Positions 4,285-57,935 of a DNA stretch of 64,000 bases are shown in pieces. Both the position numbers and the translations under genes were made by a program. Each line of letters opens with the position of its first letter. Position 1 is the stretch's first letter. The stretch is from the NCBI GenBank assembly GCA_965649765.1, contig OZ287755.1, forward strand, positions 44,578,001 through 44,642,000, in the 5' to 3' direction. Source of the DNA: Bispira polyomma (Eukaryota). Under the pieces are notes generated by a model that saw only the letters and a program-made list of their open reading frames with translations, was not told the DNA's origin and did no database searches.

Positions 4285-7200
4285 TCAGGAAGGTGAAGAA
4301 TCCACAATCTGTTGAGCAGCTACAACAGGACCTAGGTAGAGGTAGTCTTTGTCCGCCCAGGCCAGGTTTTTTAAATAAAAGTCCGTGAACGTGGAATGCG
4401 ACTTCCAATGGCAGGCTGACATAATTTGATCGACCGAAACGCCACCTTGGAAGGCTTTGGAGGCCGCGAAAGCTCTGACGTCATGAGCTTTGACCTGTAG
4501 AAGGTCGAGAGAGTGATCATCAGCGAGAGAGTAACACAACTTCACTGTTTCTTTAATCCATGATGATATGGTTGACGCCTGTATTTCTTTGCTGTGGCCT
4601 TTCTTAAAAGACACAAACAAGAGCTTTCTACCTTTCCTGATGTCGGATACTTTATCCAAGTAGTATCTCAGGGCTCTGACAGGACATAACGATCTGTCTG
4701 TAATTAGGCTTCTGTCTAACGCTGGAGCGAGAGCAGGGATGATCACCGGTGCGATACACTGTGGTCCGTCCCTAGCGAGTTGATTCTTGGCCAAAAAGGC
4801 CGGGGAGGCTGCTAAAGATATTTTCTCCCAGTGGCCCAGATTCCGCATGTACTCGAATATCCAAGCGTGAATTTCGCTCCGACGTTTTCCTGATGCCAAA
4901 GCAAGTAGGAAGGCTGTCTTGTAAGTAAGATGCTTCAGTTCTGCTTTTCGTAACGGTTCAAAAGGAGGACAAGTAAGCTGATGTAGCACAACCGAGAGAT
5001 TCCACTTTGGTAAGGATCTGGCTGCCTTAGGCCTATCTCGATGAAAACTGGTCAACAACCGAGAGATGTCCTGGTTATGACTAATATTCACTGTGGAACC
5101 GAGGGTATCCGCAATAGCCGTCCTGTAGCCTTCTATGGTAGAAGGTCTTAGGTTCTTGTCCGAGTAGAGGTGCATCAAGAAATCTGCTACTTTATTAACA
5201 GGTGGGCATGTGAAGTCCACCTGCTTTTCCTCACACCATCGTTGAAAAACGGTCCACTTTGACTTGTAGACGGATCTTGTAGAGAGCCTCTGAGGTTGAG
5301 CAATCCTTTCTGCCACTGCAGGGGTGAAGCCTTGCTCTTGTAGTCCGGTACTCCTAGACACCAAGCGTGAAGGTTCCGGATGGAACCGAAGGTTCCATGG
5401 TTGTCTGAGTAAATTGTGGCGTGGAGGTAGCAGTAGAGGAACTCGCAGTGACAAGTCCACGAGATCCCAGAACCAGGGCATTCCCGGCCACCCTGGGGCT
5501 ATGAGAAGTATCCTGCACCTGTGGGTGCGTACTTTGTTGATCACCTTGGTGATCAGAGCTGTCGGGGGATAACAGTAAACGTCCAGGTTGTCCCAAGATA
5601 TGTTGAGAGCATCCACTGCCCAGGCTTGCGGATCCGGGAGTGGAGAGACGTATATCGGTAGTTTGTGATTCAAGTTTGTTGCAAACATGTCCACATGTGG
5701 AGTGTACCACTGGCGGCACAGGGTCTTGAAAATCCGAGGGCAGAGCGACCACTCTGTCTGGATGACTTGGTTCTTTCTGGAGAGAGCGTCGGCGATGACG
5801 TTTCGACATCCGGGAATGTGACGCACTCTGAGAGTCACAGTTAACTTGTGACATAATGTTTGTATTCTCCAGACTAGGGCACACATCTCCATTGAGTGTG
5901 TGCCTCCCTGTTTGTTTATGTAGGCTACCACCGATGAGTTGTCGGTTGACAGAAGGACTCTTTGACCGGTGCACTGAACCTTGAAGGCCTGTAGAGCCAG
6001 ATAGACTGCCTTGAGTTCTAGGACATTTATGTGTAGATCTTGTTCGGACACTGACCATCCGCCTCTGGCTGTGTGACAATCCAAGTGAGCGCCCCAACCT
6101 TCGTTTGAAGCGTCTGTAAAGAGCAAGGTATTGTGCTCGAGAGGATGGAGGGAGTCTCCCACCAACACGTTTCTTGGATCCAACCACCATTCGAGGTGAG
6201 CCTTGAGGAGAGGGTCCACTGGAATGAGCTTGTTTAAGGTTTCTGGGAACCTCCAGTGGTTCTTCAGGTGCCATTGTAGAGGTCGCATTTGAAGGCGACC
6301 CCCAGGTACTTGTTTTTCTGTTGACGCAAGGAGGCCGATAAGGGACATCCAGAGTCGAACCGACACCCGAGAGATGAGGAGTATCCGGTTGATCATATCC
6401 TGTAATTTGCGCAACCGGTCTGGTGTAGGTAGTACCAGTCCCCTCTGTAAGTCGAACTGGTACCCGATGAAGGTAAAGTTCTGTGAGGGGATAAGTTCCG
6501 ACTTCTCGTAATTGATGATCCAACCCAAATCTGTGATGAGGGAGATCACGGTCTCTGTGCTGGTTTGACATTGAGCCGCTGAAGGTGCTCTGATAAGCCA
6601 GTCGTCCAAATACTGATGCATCCGAACTCCCAAAGAGAGGGCCATCAGTTTGACTTCCTTGACTAGTAGAGTGAACTCGTGAGGGGCTGTTGCTAGTCCA
6701 AATGGAAGAGCCCTGAACTGGTAGGACTTGCCTCGGTGATGAAACCTGAGGTATTTTTGAGACCGGGGGTGAATCGGGATGTGTAGATAAGCATCCGTAA
6801 GGTCCAGAGAGGTGACCCATTCCCCCTGTTGTAAAGAGGCCCGGATCGACTCCGGGGTCTCCATGCGGAACTTGTGGACCTCGAGGTATTGATTGAGAGT
6901 ACTGAGGTCTATGACCGGTCTCCACCGGTTGCCCGGTTTGGGAACCAGGAAAAGCCGACTGGTGTATCCCAACGAGTTGGTCTTTTGCACCAGTACGACT
7001 GCTTGTTTTGACAGAAGGTCCACCACACAGTTGTGTAAAGCGTTGTCTTTCTGTCCTCCCGTGTATCCGCTTATGATGTATGGGAACCGGGATAGAGGAG
7101 GCTTTCTCCGGAATGGAAGGGAATATCCTAGCCTTATGATATCCAGTTCTCTTTGAATTATTCCTTTCGATGTCCATTCGGGTACAAAATGAAGCAAACG

Positions 7201-7533
7201 CGCCCCAACCCCTGAGGGCGTCTGCTTCGGTAGAGTCTCATTTCGAGGAGCCACCCCGGCCCCGGGGGAAAGGCTTCTTGAAGCCTCCTCCCGATCCTCT
7301 GTCGGATCCATTGCCACCGCCGCCTCCACGGCCACCTCTATACGCGTTGTTTCCCCGTCCCCGGGAAGAACGACCACGTCCACCTTGGTGATAGGGTGAG
7401 GACCTGTTGCCGCGATACGAACCCTTGGACGAGCTACTTTTGTGTTTGTAGTCCCCTGAGGAACCGCGGCTTGTATGATAACGTTTATCATTTTTAATGG
7501 CCTCCTGTGCCCTGGTGACAACGGCCGGGTCAA
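4285..7533 (-). CDS. DIRS pol (RT, RNase H, DNA adenine methyltransferase-like) read in frame into tyrosine recombinase; true start uncertain
   Basis: RT: WRPVIDL, SLDLTDAY, LPFGL, YLDD. RNase H: FTDAS, INVLELKAV, TDN, ADALSR. MT-like: DMFAT...VDAL...YCYPP...LIAPGW. YR: GKRRSEI, LCPVRAL, HDVR, HWKS, FTDFY. Confidence 0.93.
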   Translation of the reverse strand: MTRPLSPGHRRPLKMINVIIQAAVPQGTTNTKVARPRVRIAATGPHPITKVDVVVLPGDGETTRIEVAVEAAVAMDPTEDREEASRSLSPGAGVAPRNETLPKQTPSGVGARLLHFVPEWTSKGIIQRELDIIRLGYSLPFRRKPPLSRFPYIISGYTGGQKDNALHNCVVDLLSKQAVVLVQKTNSLGYTSRLFLVPKPGNRWRPVIDLSTLNQYLEVHKFRMETPESIRASLQQGEWVTSLDLTDAYLHIPIHPRSQKYLRFHHRGKSYQFRALPFGLATAPHEFTLLVKEVKLMALSLGVRMHQYLDDWLIRAPSAAQCQTSTETVISLITDLGWIINYEKSELIPSQNFTFIGYQFDLQRGLVLPTPDRLRKLQDMINRILLISRVSVRLWMSLIGLLASTEKQVPGGRLQMRPLQWHLKNHWRFPETLNKLIPVDPLLKAHLEWWLDPRNVLVGDSLHPLEHNTLLFTDASNEGWGAHLDCHTARGGWSVSEQDLHINVLELKAVYLALQAFKVQCTGQRVLLSTDNSSVVAYINKQGGTHSMEMCALVWRIQTLCHKLTVTLRVRHIPGCRNVIADALSRKNQVIQTEWSLCPRIFKTLCRQWYTPHVDMFATNLNHKLPIYVSPLPDPQAWAVDALNISWDNLDVYCYPPTALITKVINKVRTHRCRILLIAPGWPGMPWFWDLVDLSLRVPLLLPPRHNLLRQPWNLRFHPEPSRLVSRSTGLQEQGFTPAVAERIAQPQRLSTRSVYKSKWTVFQRWCEEKQVDFTCPPVNKVADFLMHLYSDKNLRPSTIEGYRTAIADTLGSTVNISHNQDISRLLTSFHRDRPKAARSLPKWNLSVVLHQLTCPPFEPLRKAELKHLTYKTAFLLALASGKRRSEIHAWIFEYMRNLGHWEKISLAASPAFLAKNQLARDGPQCIAPVIIPALAPALDRSLITDRSLCPVRALRYYLDKVSDIRKGRKLLFVSFKKGHSKEIQASTISSWIKETVKLCYSLADDHSLDLLQVKAHDVRAFAASKAFQGGVSVDQIMSACHWKSHSTFTDFYLKNLAWADKDYLYLGPVVAAQQIVDSSPS
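5354..7177 (-). CDS. 607-aa ORF fully overlapping pol; probably the N-terminal part of the DIRS YR ORF, detached here by a frameshift
   Basis: Stop-free for 1.8 kb in an alternative frame of pol, as is typical of DIRS1 elements; ends about 20 nt after the inferred frameshift. Confidence 0.7.
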   Translation of the reverse strand: MDIERNNSKRTGYHKARIFPSIPEKASSIPVPIHHKRIHGRTERQRFTQLCGGPSVKTSSRTGAKDQLVGIHQSAFPGSQTGQPVETGHRPQYSQSIPRGPQVPHGDPGVDPGLFTTGGMGHLSGPYGCLSTHPDSPPVSKIPQVSSPRQVLPVQGSSIWTSNSPSRVHSTSQGSQTDGPLFGSSDASVFGRLAYQSTFSGSMSNQHRDRDLPHHRFGLDHQLREVGTYPLTELYLHRVPVRLTEGTGTTYTRPVAQITGYDQPDTPHLSGVGSTLDVPYRPPCVNRKTSTWGSPSNATSTMAPEEPLEVPRNLKQAHSSGPSPQGSPRMVVGSKKRVGGRLPPSSRAQYLALYRRFKRRLGRSLGLSHSQRRMVSVRTRSTHKCPRTQGSLSGSTGLQGSVHRSKSPSVNRQLIGGSLHKQTGRHTLNGDVCPSLENTNIMSQVNCDSQSASHSRMSKRHRRRSLQKEPSHPDRVVALPSDFQDPVPPVVHSTCGHVCNKLESQTTDIRLSTPGSASLGSGCSQHILGQPGRLLLSPDSSDHQGDQQSTHPQVQDTSHSPRVAGNALVLGSRGLVTASSSTATSTPQFTQTTMEPSVPSGTFTLGV

Positions 7534-10051
7534 ATAGGTCAGTTGAATGATACGGAGATGACCTGAGGTCGGACTTCAAGTGACCTGGCACAAAAGGGTG
7601 CAGGTTTGTTAACACCGCATCTCTGCGAAAGAGAATGGTGTTCGCCATCATTGTCATAATGTCTGCGTGAAGATGTCCCACGACACGAGACATGCTGATC
7701 ATGACCCTCTGGGCGACAGCTAAGTTTTCGTCCTTAAGGGTCGGGTCTTGCTCTTGGCGGGCCCTTGTGATGGCTATCTCCGCTGCCCTAGAGAAGTGGG
7801 AGTAATGGTTGAGGGCTGAGAGCCACTCCTTCTGTCTACCCTCCCACTGCCGCATTTGCTTTTGCGAGACGTGACAGACCGGAGCCTGTCGAGGATTGTT
7901 TTGCTCAATGTCCCGGAAATTGGGATTGAGAAGCTGTGGTGTAACCGACCACGCAGCGTCTTGGACAGGATAAAATTTCACGTCCGACCTAGGCATTTTG
8001 AGAATTTCTCCTTGCTGAAGGCGCCTAGACTCTCCACCGGTAGGGTGAGCTGTTGTAGCCAGAGTGAGAGCCTGAAATTTTGAAACCAAGTCTAAAGCCG
8101 GGAGCTTGAGAGATGGGGGCAATACGGAATCTTCTGCTGCAGGCTGGGCCCGAAATAATGAAGTGGAAGATTCCTCTTTAGGAGTTTCTTTCGGTTCTGG
8201 AATATCCAGTATTGTCCTAACCGCCTTCAATGTTTCAACATAGGTAGGGAAGTACGTGTACTCATCCCTAGTGGTGGCGTTATCGTCCTCAGAAAAATTC
8301 CGATGGGAACGCGACGAATCCCGAGAGTGTTGTCCCGGTGTAGGAGAATTCTCTGTCTGTACCATCTCCATAGCCCTTTTCTTGGCAGCGATAAACGCTA
8401 CCGCGTGTTCCTCATTTTCCTCTGAGACCTCGCCTGCCTCACGTTCCGGGTACCGTACAGGAGGAGCCCCTAAAGAAGCTGACGGTTTAGCCTTCTGTTT
8501 AGAGGTAGCCGGTCTAGCCGGGACCCCGTCAGCCGAATCGTTGGAAGAGTCCGAAGTCGAAGCGTTTGGGGTCCTCTTCCTATGGCGACTCTTTTTATCC
8601 CGTTTATGTGTCCTCTTGTGCTCTTTCTTGAGCTTACGCTCGTAACGGGCCAAGGTGTCGGGTGACATGTACTCCATCTCCTGATCAGGTTCAGGGGTGG
8701 TTTTGTCCCAAGACGTCTCCGGTTGAGTATCCCTGGGGGTCTTAGTATGATGTAGTCCATACGACCTATCCGGCTGCTCGAACATCGGCTCCTGATAACC
8801 CCTAGAATGAGGTTGCGGTTGCGAGGCTGTCGCCCCGTAAGGGGGCCGTGGCTGCTGAGCCGGAGTGAGGTTGCTACCAGAGGTGAGTCCGGAGACCGAG
8901 GTACCTTCTCCGGTGACCGGAGGTTCCCTATCACGGGTTTGTTGTTTTAGAGAGGAGAGTTCCTTCATGAGAGTCTGAAGAAGGAGATCAGACTTTGCAG
9001 CCTGTTGTTGAAGCAAATTGTCGGTACGCTGCTGTTGCAGGTCCATCTTGCCATGAAGAGAGCACAGTTCCGTGGTAAATTGATTCCTCAAATTATCCAC
9101 GAGCGCACGTGACTGTGTCATCGGTGTAGCCGGGGGGGGAGGCGGTAAAGGTTGAATACCGGCCATGCCCGGTGCCGGACCTAAGCCTGTCACCCTTTCC
9201 AATGGAATCTGGATATCGACCCTCTGAGGGTAAGGAGGCTGAAAACTACTAGTAGACGCCGTGGACGGGGGTTGCGGTTCAACCGATTCATCCAAGAGGA
9301 CATTAGCGTCAAAGTCCGAAACTTCCATAGCTTCAATACCGGCTCCGGCGTCGGTTAAACCGGTAGAACCACCGGACCGGCTAGGCGAGTCGAGTAGAGT
9401 ATCTTCTGGGGATGCCAGAGGTGCCCGTTTTTTGTCCTGCCTTTGTCGGTAGGTGACTCGCAACTTAATCTTGTTTCTTTGCTCCTCCGTGAACGACGCA
9501 CAAAACTTGCAATCCGACGGATTCTTAGCACACGGGTCCTGTCCTTTACCCACCTGCCTGCAGGTAGGACACCATCCGTGGTCGTCCCACGAAGCAAAGA
9601 AATGACCACAACGGCCCTGTTTTTGCCCCGTTTTCGTACCACTAGCCCTAGGTGGCTTGGGAGGAGGAGTGGCTACACCTATGAGAAGAAGGGCAGCACA
9701 GAGCAAAGAAATGACCACAACCGTCAGTATAGCCAGGGGAGGAAGTGCTAAGGAGGTAGACGGTCCCGTGGGCTGGACTCTACCCTCCACCGTACTGAGA
9801 AAACTCAGCCAGACAACGAGCCAGAGAGCCGAGCTCCTGTGTCTCCCCGAGGGTACAAATACCCCCATAAGATGCAACAGACCCGGGAACCGGGCCGCCA
9901 TCTTATATCCCAGGAAGATAAGGCCAGAGCTGAAAGCTCTGCAAAACCCTATCAACCCTATCCAGGAAGGACTAAGTAAGTCCAACATAATCCACAACCA
10001 AAGAGCTAACTCCATGTTGAAAAAGTTTCTTAAAACCTGTGACAGTTCCAA
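7238..10051 (-). CDS. DIRS ORF1 (gag-like); start codon uncertain
   Basis: Cys/His cluster CGH...HGWCPTC...C...CKFC, coiled-coil segment, RRDAVL...LRSSP...LF motif, RGG-rich C-terminus; located upstream of pol. Confidence 0.88.
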   Translation of the reverse strand: MELSQVLRNFFNMELALWLWIMLDLLSPSWIGLIGFCRAFSSGLIFLGYKMAARFPGLLHLMGVFVPSGRHRSSALWLVVWLSFLSTVEGRVQPTGPSTSLALPPLAILTVVVISLLCAALLLIGVATPPPKPPRASGTKTGQKQGRCGHFFASWDDHGWCPTCRQVGKGQDPCAKNPSDCKFCASFTEEQRNKIKLRVTYRQRQDKKRAPLASPEDTLLDSPSRSGGSTGLTDAGAGIEAMEVSDFDANVLLDESVEPQPPSTASTSSFQPPYPQRVDIQIPLERVTGLGPAPGMAGIQPLPPPPPATPMTQSRALVDNLRNQFTTELCSLHGKMDLQQQRTDNLLQQQAAKSDLLLQTLMKELSSLKQQTRDREPPVTGEGTSVSGLTSGSNLTPAQQPRPPYGATASQPQPHSRGYQEPMFEQPDRSYGLHHTKTPRDTQPETSWDKTTPEPDQEMEYMSPDTLARYERKLKKEHKRTHKRDKKSRHRKRTPNASTSDSSNDSADGVPARPATSKQKAKPSASLGAPPVRYPEREAGEVSEENEEHAVAFIAAKKRAMEMVQTENSPTPGQHSRDSSRSHRNFSEDDNATTRDEYTYFPTYVETLKAVRTILDIPEPKETPKEESSTSLFRAQPAAEDSVLPPSLKLPALDLVSKFQALTLATTAHPTGGESRRLQQGEILKMPRSDVKFYPVQDAAWSVTPQLLNPNFRDIEQNNPRQAPVCHVSQKQMRQWEGRQKEWLSALNHYSHFSRAAEIAITRARQEQDPTLKDENLAVAQRVMISMSRVVGHLHADIMTMMANTILFRRDAVLTNLHPFVPGHLKSDLRSSPYHSTDLFDPAVVTRAQEAIKNDKRYHTSRGSSGDYKHKSSSSKGSYRGNRSSPYHQGGRGRSSRGRGNNAYRGGRGGGGGNGSDRGSGGGFKKPFPRGRGGSSK

Positions 10052-10112
10052 AGAAATTCAATTAACAGTTCGTAATCCGAAACACGATGCTTCAAAAATG
10101 GCGACCAGTAAT

Positions 10113-55915: not shown

Positions 55916-56463
55916 GTGAGTAATCCTTTAGAATCTGTTTACAGTAAAGGAATTGGCTGCATCTCTAAAGACACTATCAATTAAAACTTCACAAATGTAA
56001 ACCGCCAAGATGCCACAGTGCCTAAGAAAGGAAAAAAAGGATCCACCCTTCTGGGTTGTGCCATGAATGGTATGCCATCCGTCTCATATCTGTGTAAATC
56101 GGTTCAGTAGTTTTGTCTAACTCTCGTGACAAACTTTACACTTCAACCAATAAACACAGGCACAAACAATCACATCCTTGCCGCATGTAATATGTGTACA
56201 CAGTAGCCATGTTAAAATTGGTAGTAATATAGTTCTGACTAGCAAAAAATCTGTGCAAGAGGCACAGTTTTGCAGAGGTGGGGGTGGAGCTGACATTGTG
56301 TACACATAAAGGATGACGATGGCTGTGATGAAGTTGTATGTGACATTTAACACAATAGCAGAAGTTGCAGATGTTGTCTATATTATTAAATGTGATAGCC
56401 TTTTTTCCAGGAATCAAATAGTTCCAAATCTATTCCAGCCAGTGTTTTTTTCCCCCCTTTTAG

Positions 56464-56633
56464 ACCTCCGGTTGGACCAACCCTTCAGAATCTCTCTACC
56501 CAGTGCTACTAGAAGACTACTTGAAGTACTTCCTTCCTCTAAACGGTCAACCAGGTCCACCCGCGTTTGCAGCACAAAATCAGGGTGTGAAGACTCCGAT
56601 CTCACATTATCACTCACCATTACATGCACACAG
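56464..56633 (+). CDS. SMPD4: SMPD4 homolog exon
   Basis: ccccttttag|...|gtgagg; SLYPVLLEDYLKYFLP; phase 0/2. Confidence 0.87.
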
Positions 56634-56651
56634 GTGAGGATATATATGTTA

Positions 56652-57413
56652 CAGTTAATCTGTGTTATGAGGGATTTCATAAAATCCCTAGAAATTTCAG
56701 GGATTTCATGAAATTTCTGTTTCAGTCAGTGATTTCTCGAAATCCCTAAAATTTCCAGGTAGTTCGCGAAATCATTAAAATTTAAGCCAGGGATTTCATG
56801 AAATCCCTAGATGTGCTATAAAATATTATTATAGGCCCCCCCGGAGCCAGGTGGAGCCACTTTTAGTACCTCAAGGGAAAATTCAAAAATCAGTTATCAG
56901 CCTCTGATGAGATAATCCAATAAGATTTTCGAAATATGTACAAAGATACAAAGGTATATATAAGGCTTATTGTTGGAGAAGACAAATACACCTCTTTCTC
57001 ACACACATCATATCTTTCTTAATTGTACTATAAAATATATCAAGTGAAGTATTATGCAAAAAAAACAACCTTAATAGCTCAATACAATTTATTTTCATTT
57101 AGCTCAATACAATTTATTTTCATTTATTCAAACATCATTATTATAACATCAGTACTTATTTTTAAAATAATAAAGTACATACAACAAATGATACAAACAT
57201 ACAACTTTATAAAACTGTACTTGTGAAATGATTTATTATTGATAGAAATAATACATTACATTAAGTGTAAAAATGTACATTAAATTTCAGTGATTTCGCG
57301 AATTCCCTGGAAATTTTAGGGATTTCACGAAATCACTGACTGAAACAGAGATTTCATAAAATTCCTGAAATTTCTAGGGATTTCATGAAATCCCTGATTA
57401 CACAGATTCACTG
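56652..57413. mobile_element. Foldback/MITE element with ~130-bp TIRs and TA flanks
   Basis: TA|cagttaatctgtg...aaattta vs taaatttc...cacagattcactg|TA; arms built from gggatttcatgaaatccc motifs. Confidence 0.88.
56896..56970 (+). ncRNA. Candidate type I hammerhead ribozyme
   Basis: Stem I atcagcct/aggcttat; CTGATGA 56904-56910; stem II gataatc/gattttc; GAAA 56931-56934; stem III atatgtac/gtatatat; cleavage triplet AUA ending at 56962. Confidence 0.72.
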
Positions 57414-57559
57414 TAATATATACAGTGTATCCCGGTAGTAAGATAGAGAACCTCTATAGACCTGTTGGGAGAACACAAAATCTGTATGAGGGGCCACGGT
57501 GGTGGCCTAGTGGTTAGAAACGTTAGCTTCACAATCAGTGACCTATCATTAAAGTCGTT

Positions 57560-57935
57560 GATATAACAATGTTCTTGGTGTTAAGGCTTCTGAGACAAGG
57601 ATATAACAATGTTCTTGGTGCTAAGGCAACTGTTTTTTGAGACCAGGACATAACATTTTTAGTAGTAAGGCAAAACTCTTCTGAGACCAGGATATAATAA
57701 TGTTCTCAGTGCTAAGGCAAAACTTTTCTGAGACCAGGATATAACAATGTTCTTAGTGGCAAGAAAACAGTTTTCTAAGACCAGGATATAACAATGTTTT
57801 TTGTCGTAAAGCAAAAGTTTTCTGAGACAAAGATATTACAATGTTCTTGGTCGTAAACCTACAGTTTGTGAGACAAGGATGTTACAATGTTCTTATTGGT
57901 AAAGCAACAGTTTTCTGAGACAAGGATATAACAAT
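57560..57935. repeat. Intronic minisatellite, ~47-bp unit, ~8 copies
   Basis: ggatataacaatg at ~57599, 57646, 57690, 57737, 57784, 57831, 57877 and 57924. Confidence 0.9.

What the first reader, a model, noticed from the sequence alone, without database searches (positions are those of the whole stretch)
56896..56970. Complete type I hammerhead ribozyme fold in sense orientation inside an SMPD4 intron, carried between the arms of a foldback element
Seen in sequence: every core element is in the right order. Stem I pairs 7/8, then CUGAUGA, stem II closed by the conserved G-C pair (6/7), GAAA, an 8-bp stem III (one G-U) and an NUH site (AUA, cut after 56962). It is on the transcribed strand of SMPD4 and sits between ~130-bp inverted arms (56652-57413) that could fold the pre-mRNA around it. 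Established: type I hammerheads travel with Penelope-like elements and retrozymes, and intronic hammerheads exist in animals; association with a TA-flanked TIR element is not the usual context. Inference: either a retroelement fragment inserted into the MITE, or a TIR element family that disperses a self-cleaving RNA into introns.
Basis: partly seen in the sequence, partly recalled or inferred. Interest (0 to 1): 0.8.

Follow-up and report, generated by a model that had tools for sequence, protein, structure and literature searches.

The report
Penelope-element hammerhead ribozyme in an intron
The self-cutting RNA motif in this SMPD4 intron is a genuine, conserved hammerhead, but it is the tail of a common Penelope-like jumping gene that landed inside an older transposon, so it is a known kind of passenger and not a new ribozyme carrier.

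Summary
The motif is at 56896-56970 (+) exactly as described. It has a full hammerhead core, three helices and cleavage after A56962.

It is not chance. A random-sequence model expects 0.1 or fewer such motifs per genome. A covariance model built only from hammerheads of Penelope-like elements (PLEs) in another organism hits it at 63.7 bits (E about 2e-12).

It does not belong to the foldback element. Bases 56827-57023 are a nested, front-truncated insertion flanked by a 15-bp target duplication. Other copies of the foldback family have the empty site.

The inserted family has about 160 near-identical copies. It forms tandem and head-to-head arrays, has variable front truncation, and in its long form carries a zinc-finger ORF about 700 nt upstream of the hammerhead.

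Homologous zinc-finger ORFs sit just downstream of RT/GIY-YIG genes, both in this genome and in another organism. There the same hammerhead follows and is the only conserved non-coding DNA. It shows compensatory changes in stems II and III.

No Rfam hammerhead model reaches its threshold. Cleavage itself is untested, and in its local context the active fold is a minor conformer.

SMPD4 runs on the + strand, so the copy is intronic and in sense.

The scan had already noted terminal hammerheads of PLEs elsewhere in this genome.

Verdict: a new member of a known kind, of modest interest.

The parts
56827..57023 (+). Nested, front-truncated 197-bp copy of the 3' end of a non-autonomous Penelope-like family ('family B'). 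56827-56832 (TATTAT) is filler at the 5' junction.
   Evidence: matches unit positions about 1516-1702 of a 1702-bp unit at 96-97% identity; the site is empty in other copies of the host element.
56812..56826 (.). Left copy of the target-site duplication
   Evidence: repeat D7; alignment with empty sites
57024..57038 (.). Right copy of the target-site duplication. Its first 6 bases also match the element's own 3' end (microhomology).
56896..56903 (+). Hammerhead stem I, 5' strand. The four bases next to the core (GCCU) are invariant in all homologues.
56904..56910 (+). Core CUGAUGA (C3-A9)
   Evidence: Identical in all 10 aligned homologues.
56911..56930 (+). Stem II hairpin: 7 positions, closed by G10.1-C11.1, U.U at the third position, 6-nt loop
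   Evidence: Four of the 7 pairs show changes on both sides across homologues.
56931..56933 (+). Core G12-A13-A14
56934..56961 (+). Stem III hairpin: 8 bp starting with A15.1-U16.1, 12-nt loop
   Evidence: 92.5% of cells paired, and 3 pairs changed on both sides.
56962..56962 (+). H17 (A). The predicted cut is between 56962 and 56963.
   Evidence: Position in the motif. A in all homologues. Cleavage not tested.
56963..56970 (+). Stem I, 3' strand. T56967 is a minority variant that closes the otherwise conserved A.A.
56643..56785 (.). Left arm of the older foldback/MITE element ('family A'). The TA-flanked terminus is at about 56652.
   Evidence: I1; at least 96 matches in the genome at 85-91% identity.
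57280..57422 (.). Right arm of the foldback element
57030..57279 (.). Interior of the foldback element, shared with other family A copies. In those copies it directly follows 56826.

Best explanation
Window 56896-56970 is a copy of the hammerhead ribozyme that sits near the 3' end of a clade of Penelope-like retroelements (PLEs).

Shown here:
1. A young, non-autonomous PLE derivative (family B) inserted a front-truncated 197-bp 3' fragment into a pre-existing foldback MITE in an SMPD4 intron, in sense orientation. Family B has a 1.7-kb unit, about 160 copies, tandem and head-to-head arrays, and no RT or endonuclease of its own.
2. The insertion made a 15-bp target duplication, as target-primed reverse transcription does.
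3. The hammerhead is the one conserved island of non-coding DNA across otherwise diverged elements. Its core is invariant and stems II and III show compensatory changes.

Inferred:
- In PLE transcripts the motif cuts between A17 and A1.1, about 57-67 nt before the element's 3' end. This would help process read-through or multimeric transcripts of the tandem (pseudo-LTR) arrangement, as proposed for PLE hammerheads in general.
- In this solo intronic copy the same cut could sever the SMPD4 pre-mRNA.
- Competing local hairpins make the active fold rare, so the copy is most likely a nearly inert passenger.
For: Motif and chance:
- Complete motif. The minimum-energy fold of the isolated RNA is the hammerhead.
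- Chance expectation is 0.1 or fewer per genome.

Nested insertion:
- Target duplication and empty sites.

Family B anatomy:
- 1702-bp unit, tandem and inverted arrays, 5' truncation points spread from unit position 56 to 1529, variable 3' ends.
- No ORF with RT or endonuclease.
- 159 genomic matches to the 31-nt core plus stem II, against 0 for the reversed control.

Link to PLEs:
- The long form has an intact 279-aa C2H2 ORF about 700 nt upstream of the hammerhead.
- Homologues of that ORF (53-57% identity) lie about 400 bp downstream of GIY-YIG hits on the same strand in at least 14 elements of this genome.
- At C2:19475493 to 19477788 the order GIY-YIG, zinc-finger ORF, hammerhead is seen directly.
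- In another organism's assembly, seven of eight loci carrying homologous zinc-finger ORFs have the hammerhead downstream on the same strand. Four of them (L064, L066, L069, L070) also have RT and/or GIY-YIG upstream.

Conservation and structure:
- The hammerhead and the start of the zinc-finger ORF are the only DNA similarities between these elements.
- Pair counts: 83% of cells paired against 75% in shuffles (0 of 500 reach the observed value). 8 pairs changed on both sides. Slid controls give 27-46% paired.
- A model trained without family B hits the window at 63.7 bits, E 2.3e-12, over its full length.
- 398 further motifs of the same architecture occur in this genome, 0 in the control.

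Literature:
- PLE hammerheads, their position near the 3' end in pseudo-LTRs, and tandem/inverted/truncated insertions are described in PMC4209133 and PMC8557442.
Against: - No Rfam hammerhead model reports it, even at E<=10. Only a sub-threshold RAGATH-1-hammerhead alignment (18 bits) was found for one homologue.
- The helices are AU-rich, and the folding energy is not better than shuffles.
- With 15-200 nt of natural flank, the hammerhead fold lies 1.7-6 kcal/mol above the optimum (estimated occupancy 3e-5 to 7e-3). A 7-bp hairpin sequesters CUGAUGA, and loop 2 pairs with downstream sequence.
- Within family B the copies are too alike to show selection.
- No family B copy was seen next to RT or GIY-YIG.
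- Genomic copy ends do not coincide with the predicted cut.
- No RNA data could be obtained.
- RNAalifold on its own recovers stem III and part of stem I, but not stem II.
Confidence: 0.85

Rival explanations
1. The motif is conserved in these retroelements for a role other than self-cleavage. For example, it could be a 3'-terminal RNA structure recognised by the element's reverse transcriptase when copying starts, with the hammerhead core kept as a fold rather than as a catalyst.
For: It lies 57-67 nt from the 3' end, where target-primed reverse transcription begins. Genomic copy ends never map to the cut site. Published metazoan PLE hammerheads cleave poorly in vitro (PMC4209133). The active fold is a minor conformer in context.
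Against: All 13 catalytic core positions, G10.1-C11.1, A15.1-U16.1 and a non-G at position 17 are invariant across diverged copies, while helix sequences change with compensation. A purely structural role would not need that.
Confidence: 0.1
2. It is a chance hammerhead look-alike in AT-rich transposon DNA, amplified only because the repeat spread.
For: No Rfam hit. Non-significant folding energy. Near-identity of the family B copies says nothing about selection.
Against: Chance expectation is 0.1 or fewer per genome. The same motif is kept at the same position in elements whose proteins are only 34-57% identical and whose other non-coding DNA is unalignable. There are compensatory changes. 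An independent model gives E 2e-12.
Confidence: 0.03
3. The TA-flanked foldback (TIR) family carries and disperses the ribozyme into introns.
For: In this window the motif lies between the arms.
Against: Other family copies have the uninterrupted site. The motif-bearing segment is flanked by its own target duplication. The roughly 160 copies of the motif family occur without the arms.
Confidence: 0.02

Closest known systems
Hammerhead ribozymes of Penelope-like elements (Cervera & De la Pena 2014, PMC4209133; Craig et al. 2021, PMC8557442)
   Same: - Type I topology.
- Located near the 3' end, in the pseudo-LTR, of elements with RT and GIY-YIG.
- Long helix II (6-7 bp) and short helix I (4-5 bp).
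- Conserved G10.1-C11.1.
- Host elements show 5' truncation and partial tandem and inverted arrays.
- High copy number, with near-identical motifs in a recently active family (as in D. virilis).
   Different: - Published metazoan PLE motifs are 'minimal': helix III is absent, or 1-2 bp and palindromic, and they are thought to act as dimers. They also have an extra base between A9 and G10.1.
- Here helix III is 8-10 bp with a 6-12-nt loop and there is no extra base. That is closer to the large-helix-III variants reported for fungal and protist PLEs.
- The host clade also carries a zinc-finger ORF between the endonuclease and the ribozyme.
Metazoan non-LTR retrozymes (PMC7229834; bioRxiv 10.64898/2026.07.22.740005)
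   Same: Non-autonomous, AT-rich, tandemly arrayed repeats, each with a type I hammerhead. Target duplications are longer than 4 bp. They are proposed to derive from PLE pseudo-LTRs.
   Different: - The unit is 1.7 kb (2.4 kb with the ORF), against 51-972 bp in the published families.
- The long form keeps an intact protein-coding ORF.
- Circular RNA was not examined.
Conserved intronic hammerheads of amniotes (HH9 in RECK, HH10 in CTCL; Rfam RF02275, RF02277)
   Same: A type I hammerhead in sense orientation inside an intron of a protein-coding gene, with presumed retroelement ancestry.
   Different: Those are single-copy and conserved at orthologous sites across classes. This one is one of about 160 young copies (about 2% from its family consensus). 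There is no evidence of domestication and no match to those models.

Membership tests
Hammerhead ribozyme, type I | Conserved core C3 U4 G5 A6 N7 G8 A9, G12 A13 A14, and a non-G at position 17 | tested here: met
   Invariant in 10 aligned homologues. 34 of 36 family copies are intact; the other two carry a G12-to-A CpG decay.
Hammerhead ribozyme, type I | G10.1-C11.1 and A15.1-U16.1 closing pairs, with three helices and stem I open | tested here: met
   The covariation count supports stems II and III. The stem I pairs next to the core never vary.
Hammerhead ribozyme, type I | Match to curated covariance models (Rfam RF00163, RF02275, RF02277, RF00008, RF02276) at the gathering score | tested here: not met
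   No hammerhead model is listed at E<=10 on the window or on L064. The whole-genome RF00163 look was uninformative (73 of 99183 candidates scored). L069 aligns to RF03152 in the correct register at 18.4 bits, against a threshold of 56.3.
Hammerhead ribozyme, type I | Tertiary contact between helix I (loop or bulge) and loop 2 | tested here: inconclusive
   A.A at stem I position 5 is kept in 9 of 10 sequences, and an internal loop follows 4 bp. A loop 2 to downstream pairing was not above chance.
Hammerhead ribozyme, type I | Site-specific self-cleavage | not testable with these tools
Penelope-like element hammerhead | Lies in the 3'-terminal / pseudo-LTR region of an element encoding RT and GIY-YIG | tested here: met
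   Met for homologues: L064, L066, L069 and L070, the last with a second copy upstream. Also met at G000 C2:19475493 to 19477788. Family B itself has no RT or endonuclease and is read as a non-autonomous derivative.
Penelope-like element hammerhead | Host element shows 5' truncation, partial tandems and inverted head-to-head copies | tested here: met
Penelope-like element hammerhead | Metazoan 'minimal' architecture: helix III absent or 1-2 bp and palindromic, with an extra base between A9 and G10.1 | tested here: not met
   Helix III is 8-10 bp, and G10.1 follows A9 directly.
Model of the clade's own hammerheads (R1, built from another organism's PLE loci only) | Significant full-length match | tested here: met
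   63.7 bits, E 2.3e-12, model positions 1-81 of 81. The next hits in the window have E above 1.
Non-LTR retrozyme | Short tandem repeats, each with a type I hammerhead, expressed as circular RNA | tested here: inconclusive
   Tandem units exist but are 1.7 kb long. RNA could not be examined.
   Empty sites in L035, L037, L044 and L053.

The most novel reading that the evidence does not exclude
The zinc-finger-carrying PLE clade has swapped the usual dimer-dependent minimal hammerhead for a monomeric form with a stable 8-10-bp helix III. This form is missed by the Rfam type I model and is present in more than 550 copies here. It cleaves efficiently on its own, so sense-oriented intronic copies such as this one measurably cut host pre-mRNAs, here SMPD4.
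Probability: 0.2. Interest if true: 0.5.

Novelty: new member of a known kind. Interest (0 to 1): 0.3.

Why it matters
The result settles what the motif is. Hammerheads at the ends of Penelope-like elements have been known since 2014, and this is one more family of them, not a new vehicle for ribozymes.

Three points have some value for specialists:
- This clade's hammerhead has a long helix III and escapes the Rfam type I model, so surveys based on that model would under-count it.
- The comparative set assembled here (two genomes, several subfamilies, compensatory changes) gives a ready covariance model and clear constructs for cleavage assays.
- A young sense-strand copy about 260 nt downstream of a candidate SMPD4 exon (the apparent splice donor lies near 56634) is a natural test of whether such ribozymes disturb host splicing.

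Tried and rejected
- **Rfam scans** of the window, the family unit and L064 gave no hammerhead hit. The whole-genome RF00163 search scored too few candidates to mean anything.
- **Selection test within family B:** the copies are about 1% from their consensus, so an intact core is uninformative.
- **Genome letters:** The hammerhead strings printed by the pattern searches were compared by eye only and were not re-typed into any tool.
- **Other look-ups:** the exact-protein look-up of the zinc-finger ORF found nothing. The pattern scan of metagenome contigs gave 0 matches.
- **Pseudoknot between loop 2 and the sequence 5-18 nt past stem I:** not above shuffles in 6 of 8 sequences, so rejected.
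- **Cleavage site as a defined copy end:** inner ends of the inverted arms scatter (unit positions 214, 924, 1210, 1303, 1476, 1566, 1587, 1589, 1612, 1645), and 3' ends lie at about 1702 or inside the next unit. Not supported.
- **Adjacency of family B to GIY-YIG:** none among the listed places, but both lists are partial.
- **RNAalifold consensus:** recovers stem III and part of stem I only.
- **miRNA-type Rfam hits on the foldback arms** (37 bits or less, far below threshold) are read as generic hairpin matches.

Full report
**1. The observation.**

- Stem I: 56896-56903 with 56963-56970, 7 of 8 pairs.
- Core: CUGAUGA at 56904-56910.
- Stem II: 7 positions closed by G-C, with one U.U and a 6-nt loop.
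- GAA, then an 8-bp stem III starting with A-U (one G.U, 12-nt loop).
- AUA, with the cut predicted after A56962.

The isolated 75 nt fold into this junction as the minimum-energy structure. The energy (-11.5 kcal/mol) is ordinary for the composition (z -1.1). The 143-nt inverted arms at 56643-56785 and 57280-57422 are 90% complementary.

**2. Is it more than chance?**

I simulated 3 million sequence contexts around CUGAUGA with the window's dinucleotide make-up. None met a descriptor as good as the observed motif. A medium descriptor is expected about 0.1 times, and a very loose one 1-3 times, per 1-Gb genome. In the 64-kb window, and in 286 kb of other real DNA from this genome, a very relaxed descriptor found nothing but copies of this same repeat. 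Chance is therefore unlikely, even allowing for the size of the scan.

**3. What carries it.**

The segment 56833-57029 belongs to a young, high-copy repeat (96-97% identity). The arms, and the interior at 57030-57262, belong to a different and older family (85-94% identity).

In other copies of that older foldback family, base 56826 is followed directly by base 57039. In the window, the sequence TGT[G/A]CTATAAAATAT is present on both sides, at 56812-56826 and 57024-57038. So 56827-57023 is a nested insertion with a 15-bp target duplication. The foldback family does not carry the ribozyme.

**4. The inserted family (family B).**

- Its unit is 1702 bp.
- Copies are truncated at many different 5' points. 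They end at a slightly variable 3' terminus, or run on into the start of the next unit.
- They form head-to-tail and head-to-head arrays.
- The hammerhead core starts at unit position 1587. The cut site is 57-67 nt from the 3' end.
- No RT or endonuclease is encoded.
- The genome holds 159 matches to the 31-nt core plus stem II, at least 100 of them exact, against 0 for the reversed control.

These traits are the published hallmarks of Penelope-like elements: variable 5' truncation, a long target duplication with 3' microhomology, and partial tandems plus inverted copies. Those elements carry hammerheads near their 3' ends (PMC8557442; PMC4209133).

**5. The link to real Penelope-like elements.**

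This genome has many GIY-YIG hits inside open frames of 800-840 codons, often in inverted pairs.

A longer form of family B carries an intact 279-codon C2H2 zinc-finger ORF about 700 nt upstream of the hammerhead. Earlier notes of this scan (s1-581971 and others) described PLEs here with a zinc-finger gene between the endonuclease and a terminal hammerhead. I took that as a lead and tested it by coordinates:
- Homologues of the ORF (53-57% identity) lie about 400 bp downstream of GIY-YIG hits on the same strand in at least 14 places.
- At C2:19475493-19477842 the order GIY-YIG, zinc-finger ORF, hammerhead is seen directly.

**6. Homologues in another organism.**

A profile search with the ORF found 28 relatives. 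I fetched loci for nine ORF relatives: eight from that search and P0001 from the earlier word-index search. Eight of the nine lay on large contigs of a single public assembly that is not this genome. The ninth was found only on 1.3-kb contigs too short to reach the hammerhead region.
- Seven of those eight loci have a hammerhead of the same architecture downstream of the ORF on the same strand.
- In L064, L066, L069 and L070, RT and/or GIY-YIG lies upstream.
- L070 has a second copy 6.2 kb upstream, the pseudo-LTR arrangement.

BLAST, which knows nothing of the motif, finds only two DNA similarities between family B and these elements: the hammerhead (71 nt, 75-80%) and the first 50-80 nt of the ORF. 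Between the most diverged subfamilies, the hammerhead is the only similarity in the 3' region.

**7. Structure support.**

I aligned ten sequences and anchored the helices only on the invariant core strings.
- Stem II shows A-U/C-G, A-U/U-A, U-A/G-C and C-G/A-U exchanges.
- Stem III shows A-U/U-A and U-A/G-C/C-G exchanges.

The pair-count tool gives these results:

| Measure | Named structure | Control |
|---|---|---|
| Cells paired | 83.3% | 75.3% in shuffles (0 of 500 reach the observed value) |
| Covariation score | 0.200 | 0.077 in shuffles |
| Pairs changed on both sides | 8 | shuffle mean 4.8 (5 of 500 reach 8) |
| Cells paired, partners slid 1-3 columns | n/a | 27-46% |

Caveats apply. 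The sequences are related, and the structure was first read from one of them. RNAalifold alone recovers only stem III and part of stem I.

Two non-canonical features recur:
- An A.A at stem I position 5 (9 of 10 sequences; the window copy alone has A-U).
- A mismatch at the third position of stem II in several families.

As an independent membership test, I built a covariance model from the eight foreign sequences only. It hits the window at 56892-56974 with 63.7 bits, E about 2e-12, over its full length. Nothing else in the window scores below E = 1.

A pattern that excludes family B finds 398 further motifs of this architecture in the genome and none in the reversed control.

**8. What remains open.**

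- No Rfam hammerhead model reports the window motif. The best result for any homologue is a sub-threshold RAGATH-1-hammerhead alignment in the right register (18.4 bits).
- The helices are AU-rich.
- With natural flanks the hammerhead fold is 1.7-6 kcal/mol above the optimum. The family-specific hairpin UUAUCAG/CUGAUGA sequesters the core, and loop 2 can pair downstream. Secondary-structure energies ignore tertiary contacts and co-transcriptional order, so this only argues against fast cleavage.
- Copy ends do not map to the cut site.
- RNA evidence could not be obtained.
- Published metazoan PLE hammerheads cleave poorly in vitro. The long helix III here resembles the monomer-active fungal variants.

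**9. Host context.**

Pfam mit_SMPDase matches are collinear on the + strand. There is a weak match at window 56461-56601, and strong matches start 2.7 kb past the window's end. The copy is therefore intronic and in sense.

It differs from its family consensus at about 4 of 197 positions, so it is young. Nothing suggests domestication.

My reading is that this is a passenger copy that at most cuts a small fraction of SMPD4 pre-mRNA. The foldback arms could bring its flanks together in RNA, but that is incidental.

**10. Verdict.**

- The motif is a new member of the known class of PLE hammerheads, with a long-helix-III architecture that the literature read here does not describe for animal PLEs.
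- Interest is modest.

Noticed in passing
G000 genome-wide (places listed): At least 398 further hammerhead motifs of the same architecture, in several sequence families, against none in the reversed-pattern control. Examples are stem II GAACACCC.../...GGAGUUC, GAAUACCC..., GACAACUC... and GAACAGCC.... Some lie in 5.6-kb tandem arrays (C1:51313136, 51318775, 51324416). Many copies show CpG decay of C11.1-G12.
   Followed up: partly
L012:2303-3139 (-), L028:2-835, L017:20-844; places: The long form of the family carries an intact 279-codon ORF with two C2H2 fingers. It is open in at least 18 copies at 89-100% identity. Diverged homologues follow the GIY-YIG gene of autonomous Penelope-like elements here and in another organism. 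The scan has noted this gene before (s1-581971, s1-585849).
   Followed up: partly
window 56600-56652: A good 5' splice-site string (CAG|GTGAGG at 56634/56635) lies only about 17 nt before the terminus of the foldback element. If the exon call is right, the transposon sits almost on the splice donor. The Pfam match for this exon is weak (E 0.49, with one stop inside).
   Followed up: no
window 57075-57124: A perfect 25-bp tandem duplication inside the foldback element's interior.
   Followed up: no
window 57560-57700: About four tandem copies of a unit of about 44 bp just downstream of the foldback element (repeat families D3-D5).
   Followed up: no
window 4288-10057 (-): Very long open frames (1096, 939 and 627 codons) on the minus strand near the start of the window. 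They were not identified.
   Followed up: no
alignment A4, columns 8/76 and 22/37: Two non-canonical juxtapositions recur across diverged hammerheads. One is A.A at stem I position 5 (the window copy alone has A-U). The other is a mismatch (U.U, A.A or C.A) at the third position of stem II. They may be tertiary-contact sites.
   Followed up: partly
L018:1-1647 (+): A LINE-type reverse transcriptase ORF (RVT_1, E 2e-23) into which a family B copy has inserted. It is unrelated to the finding.
   Followed up: no
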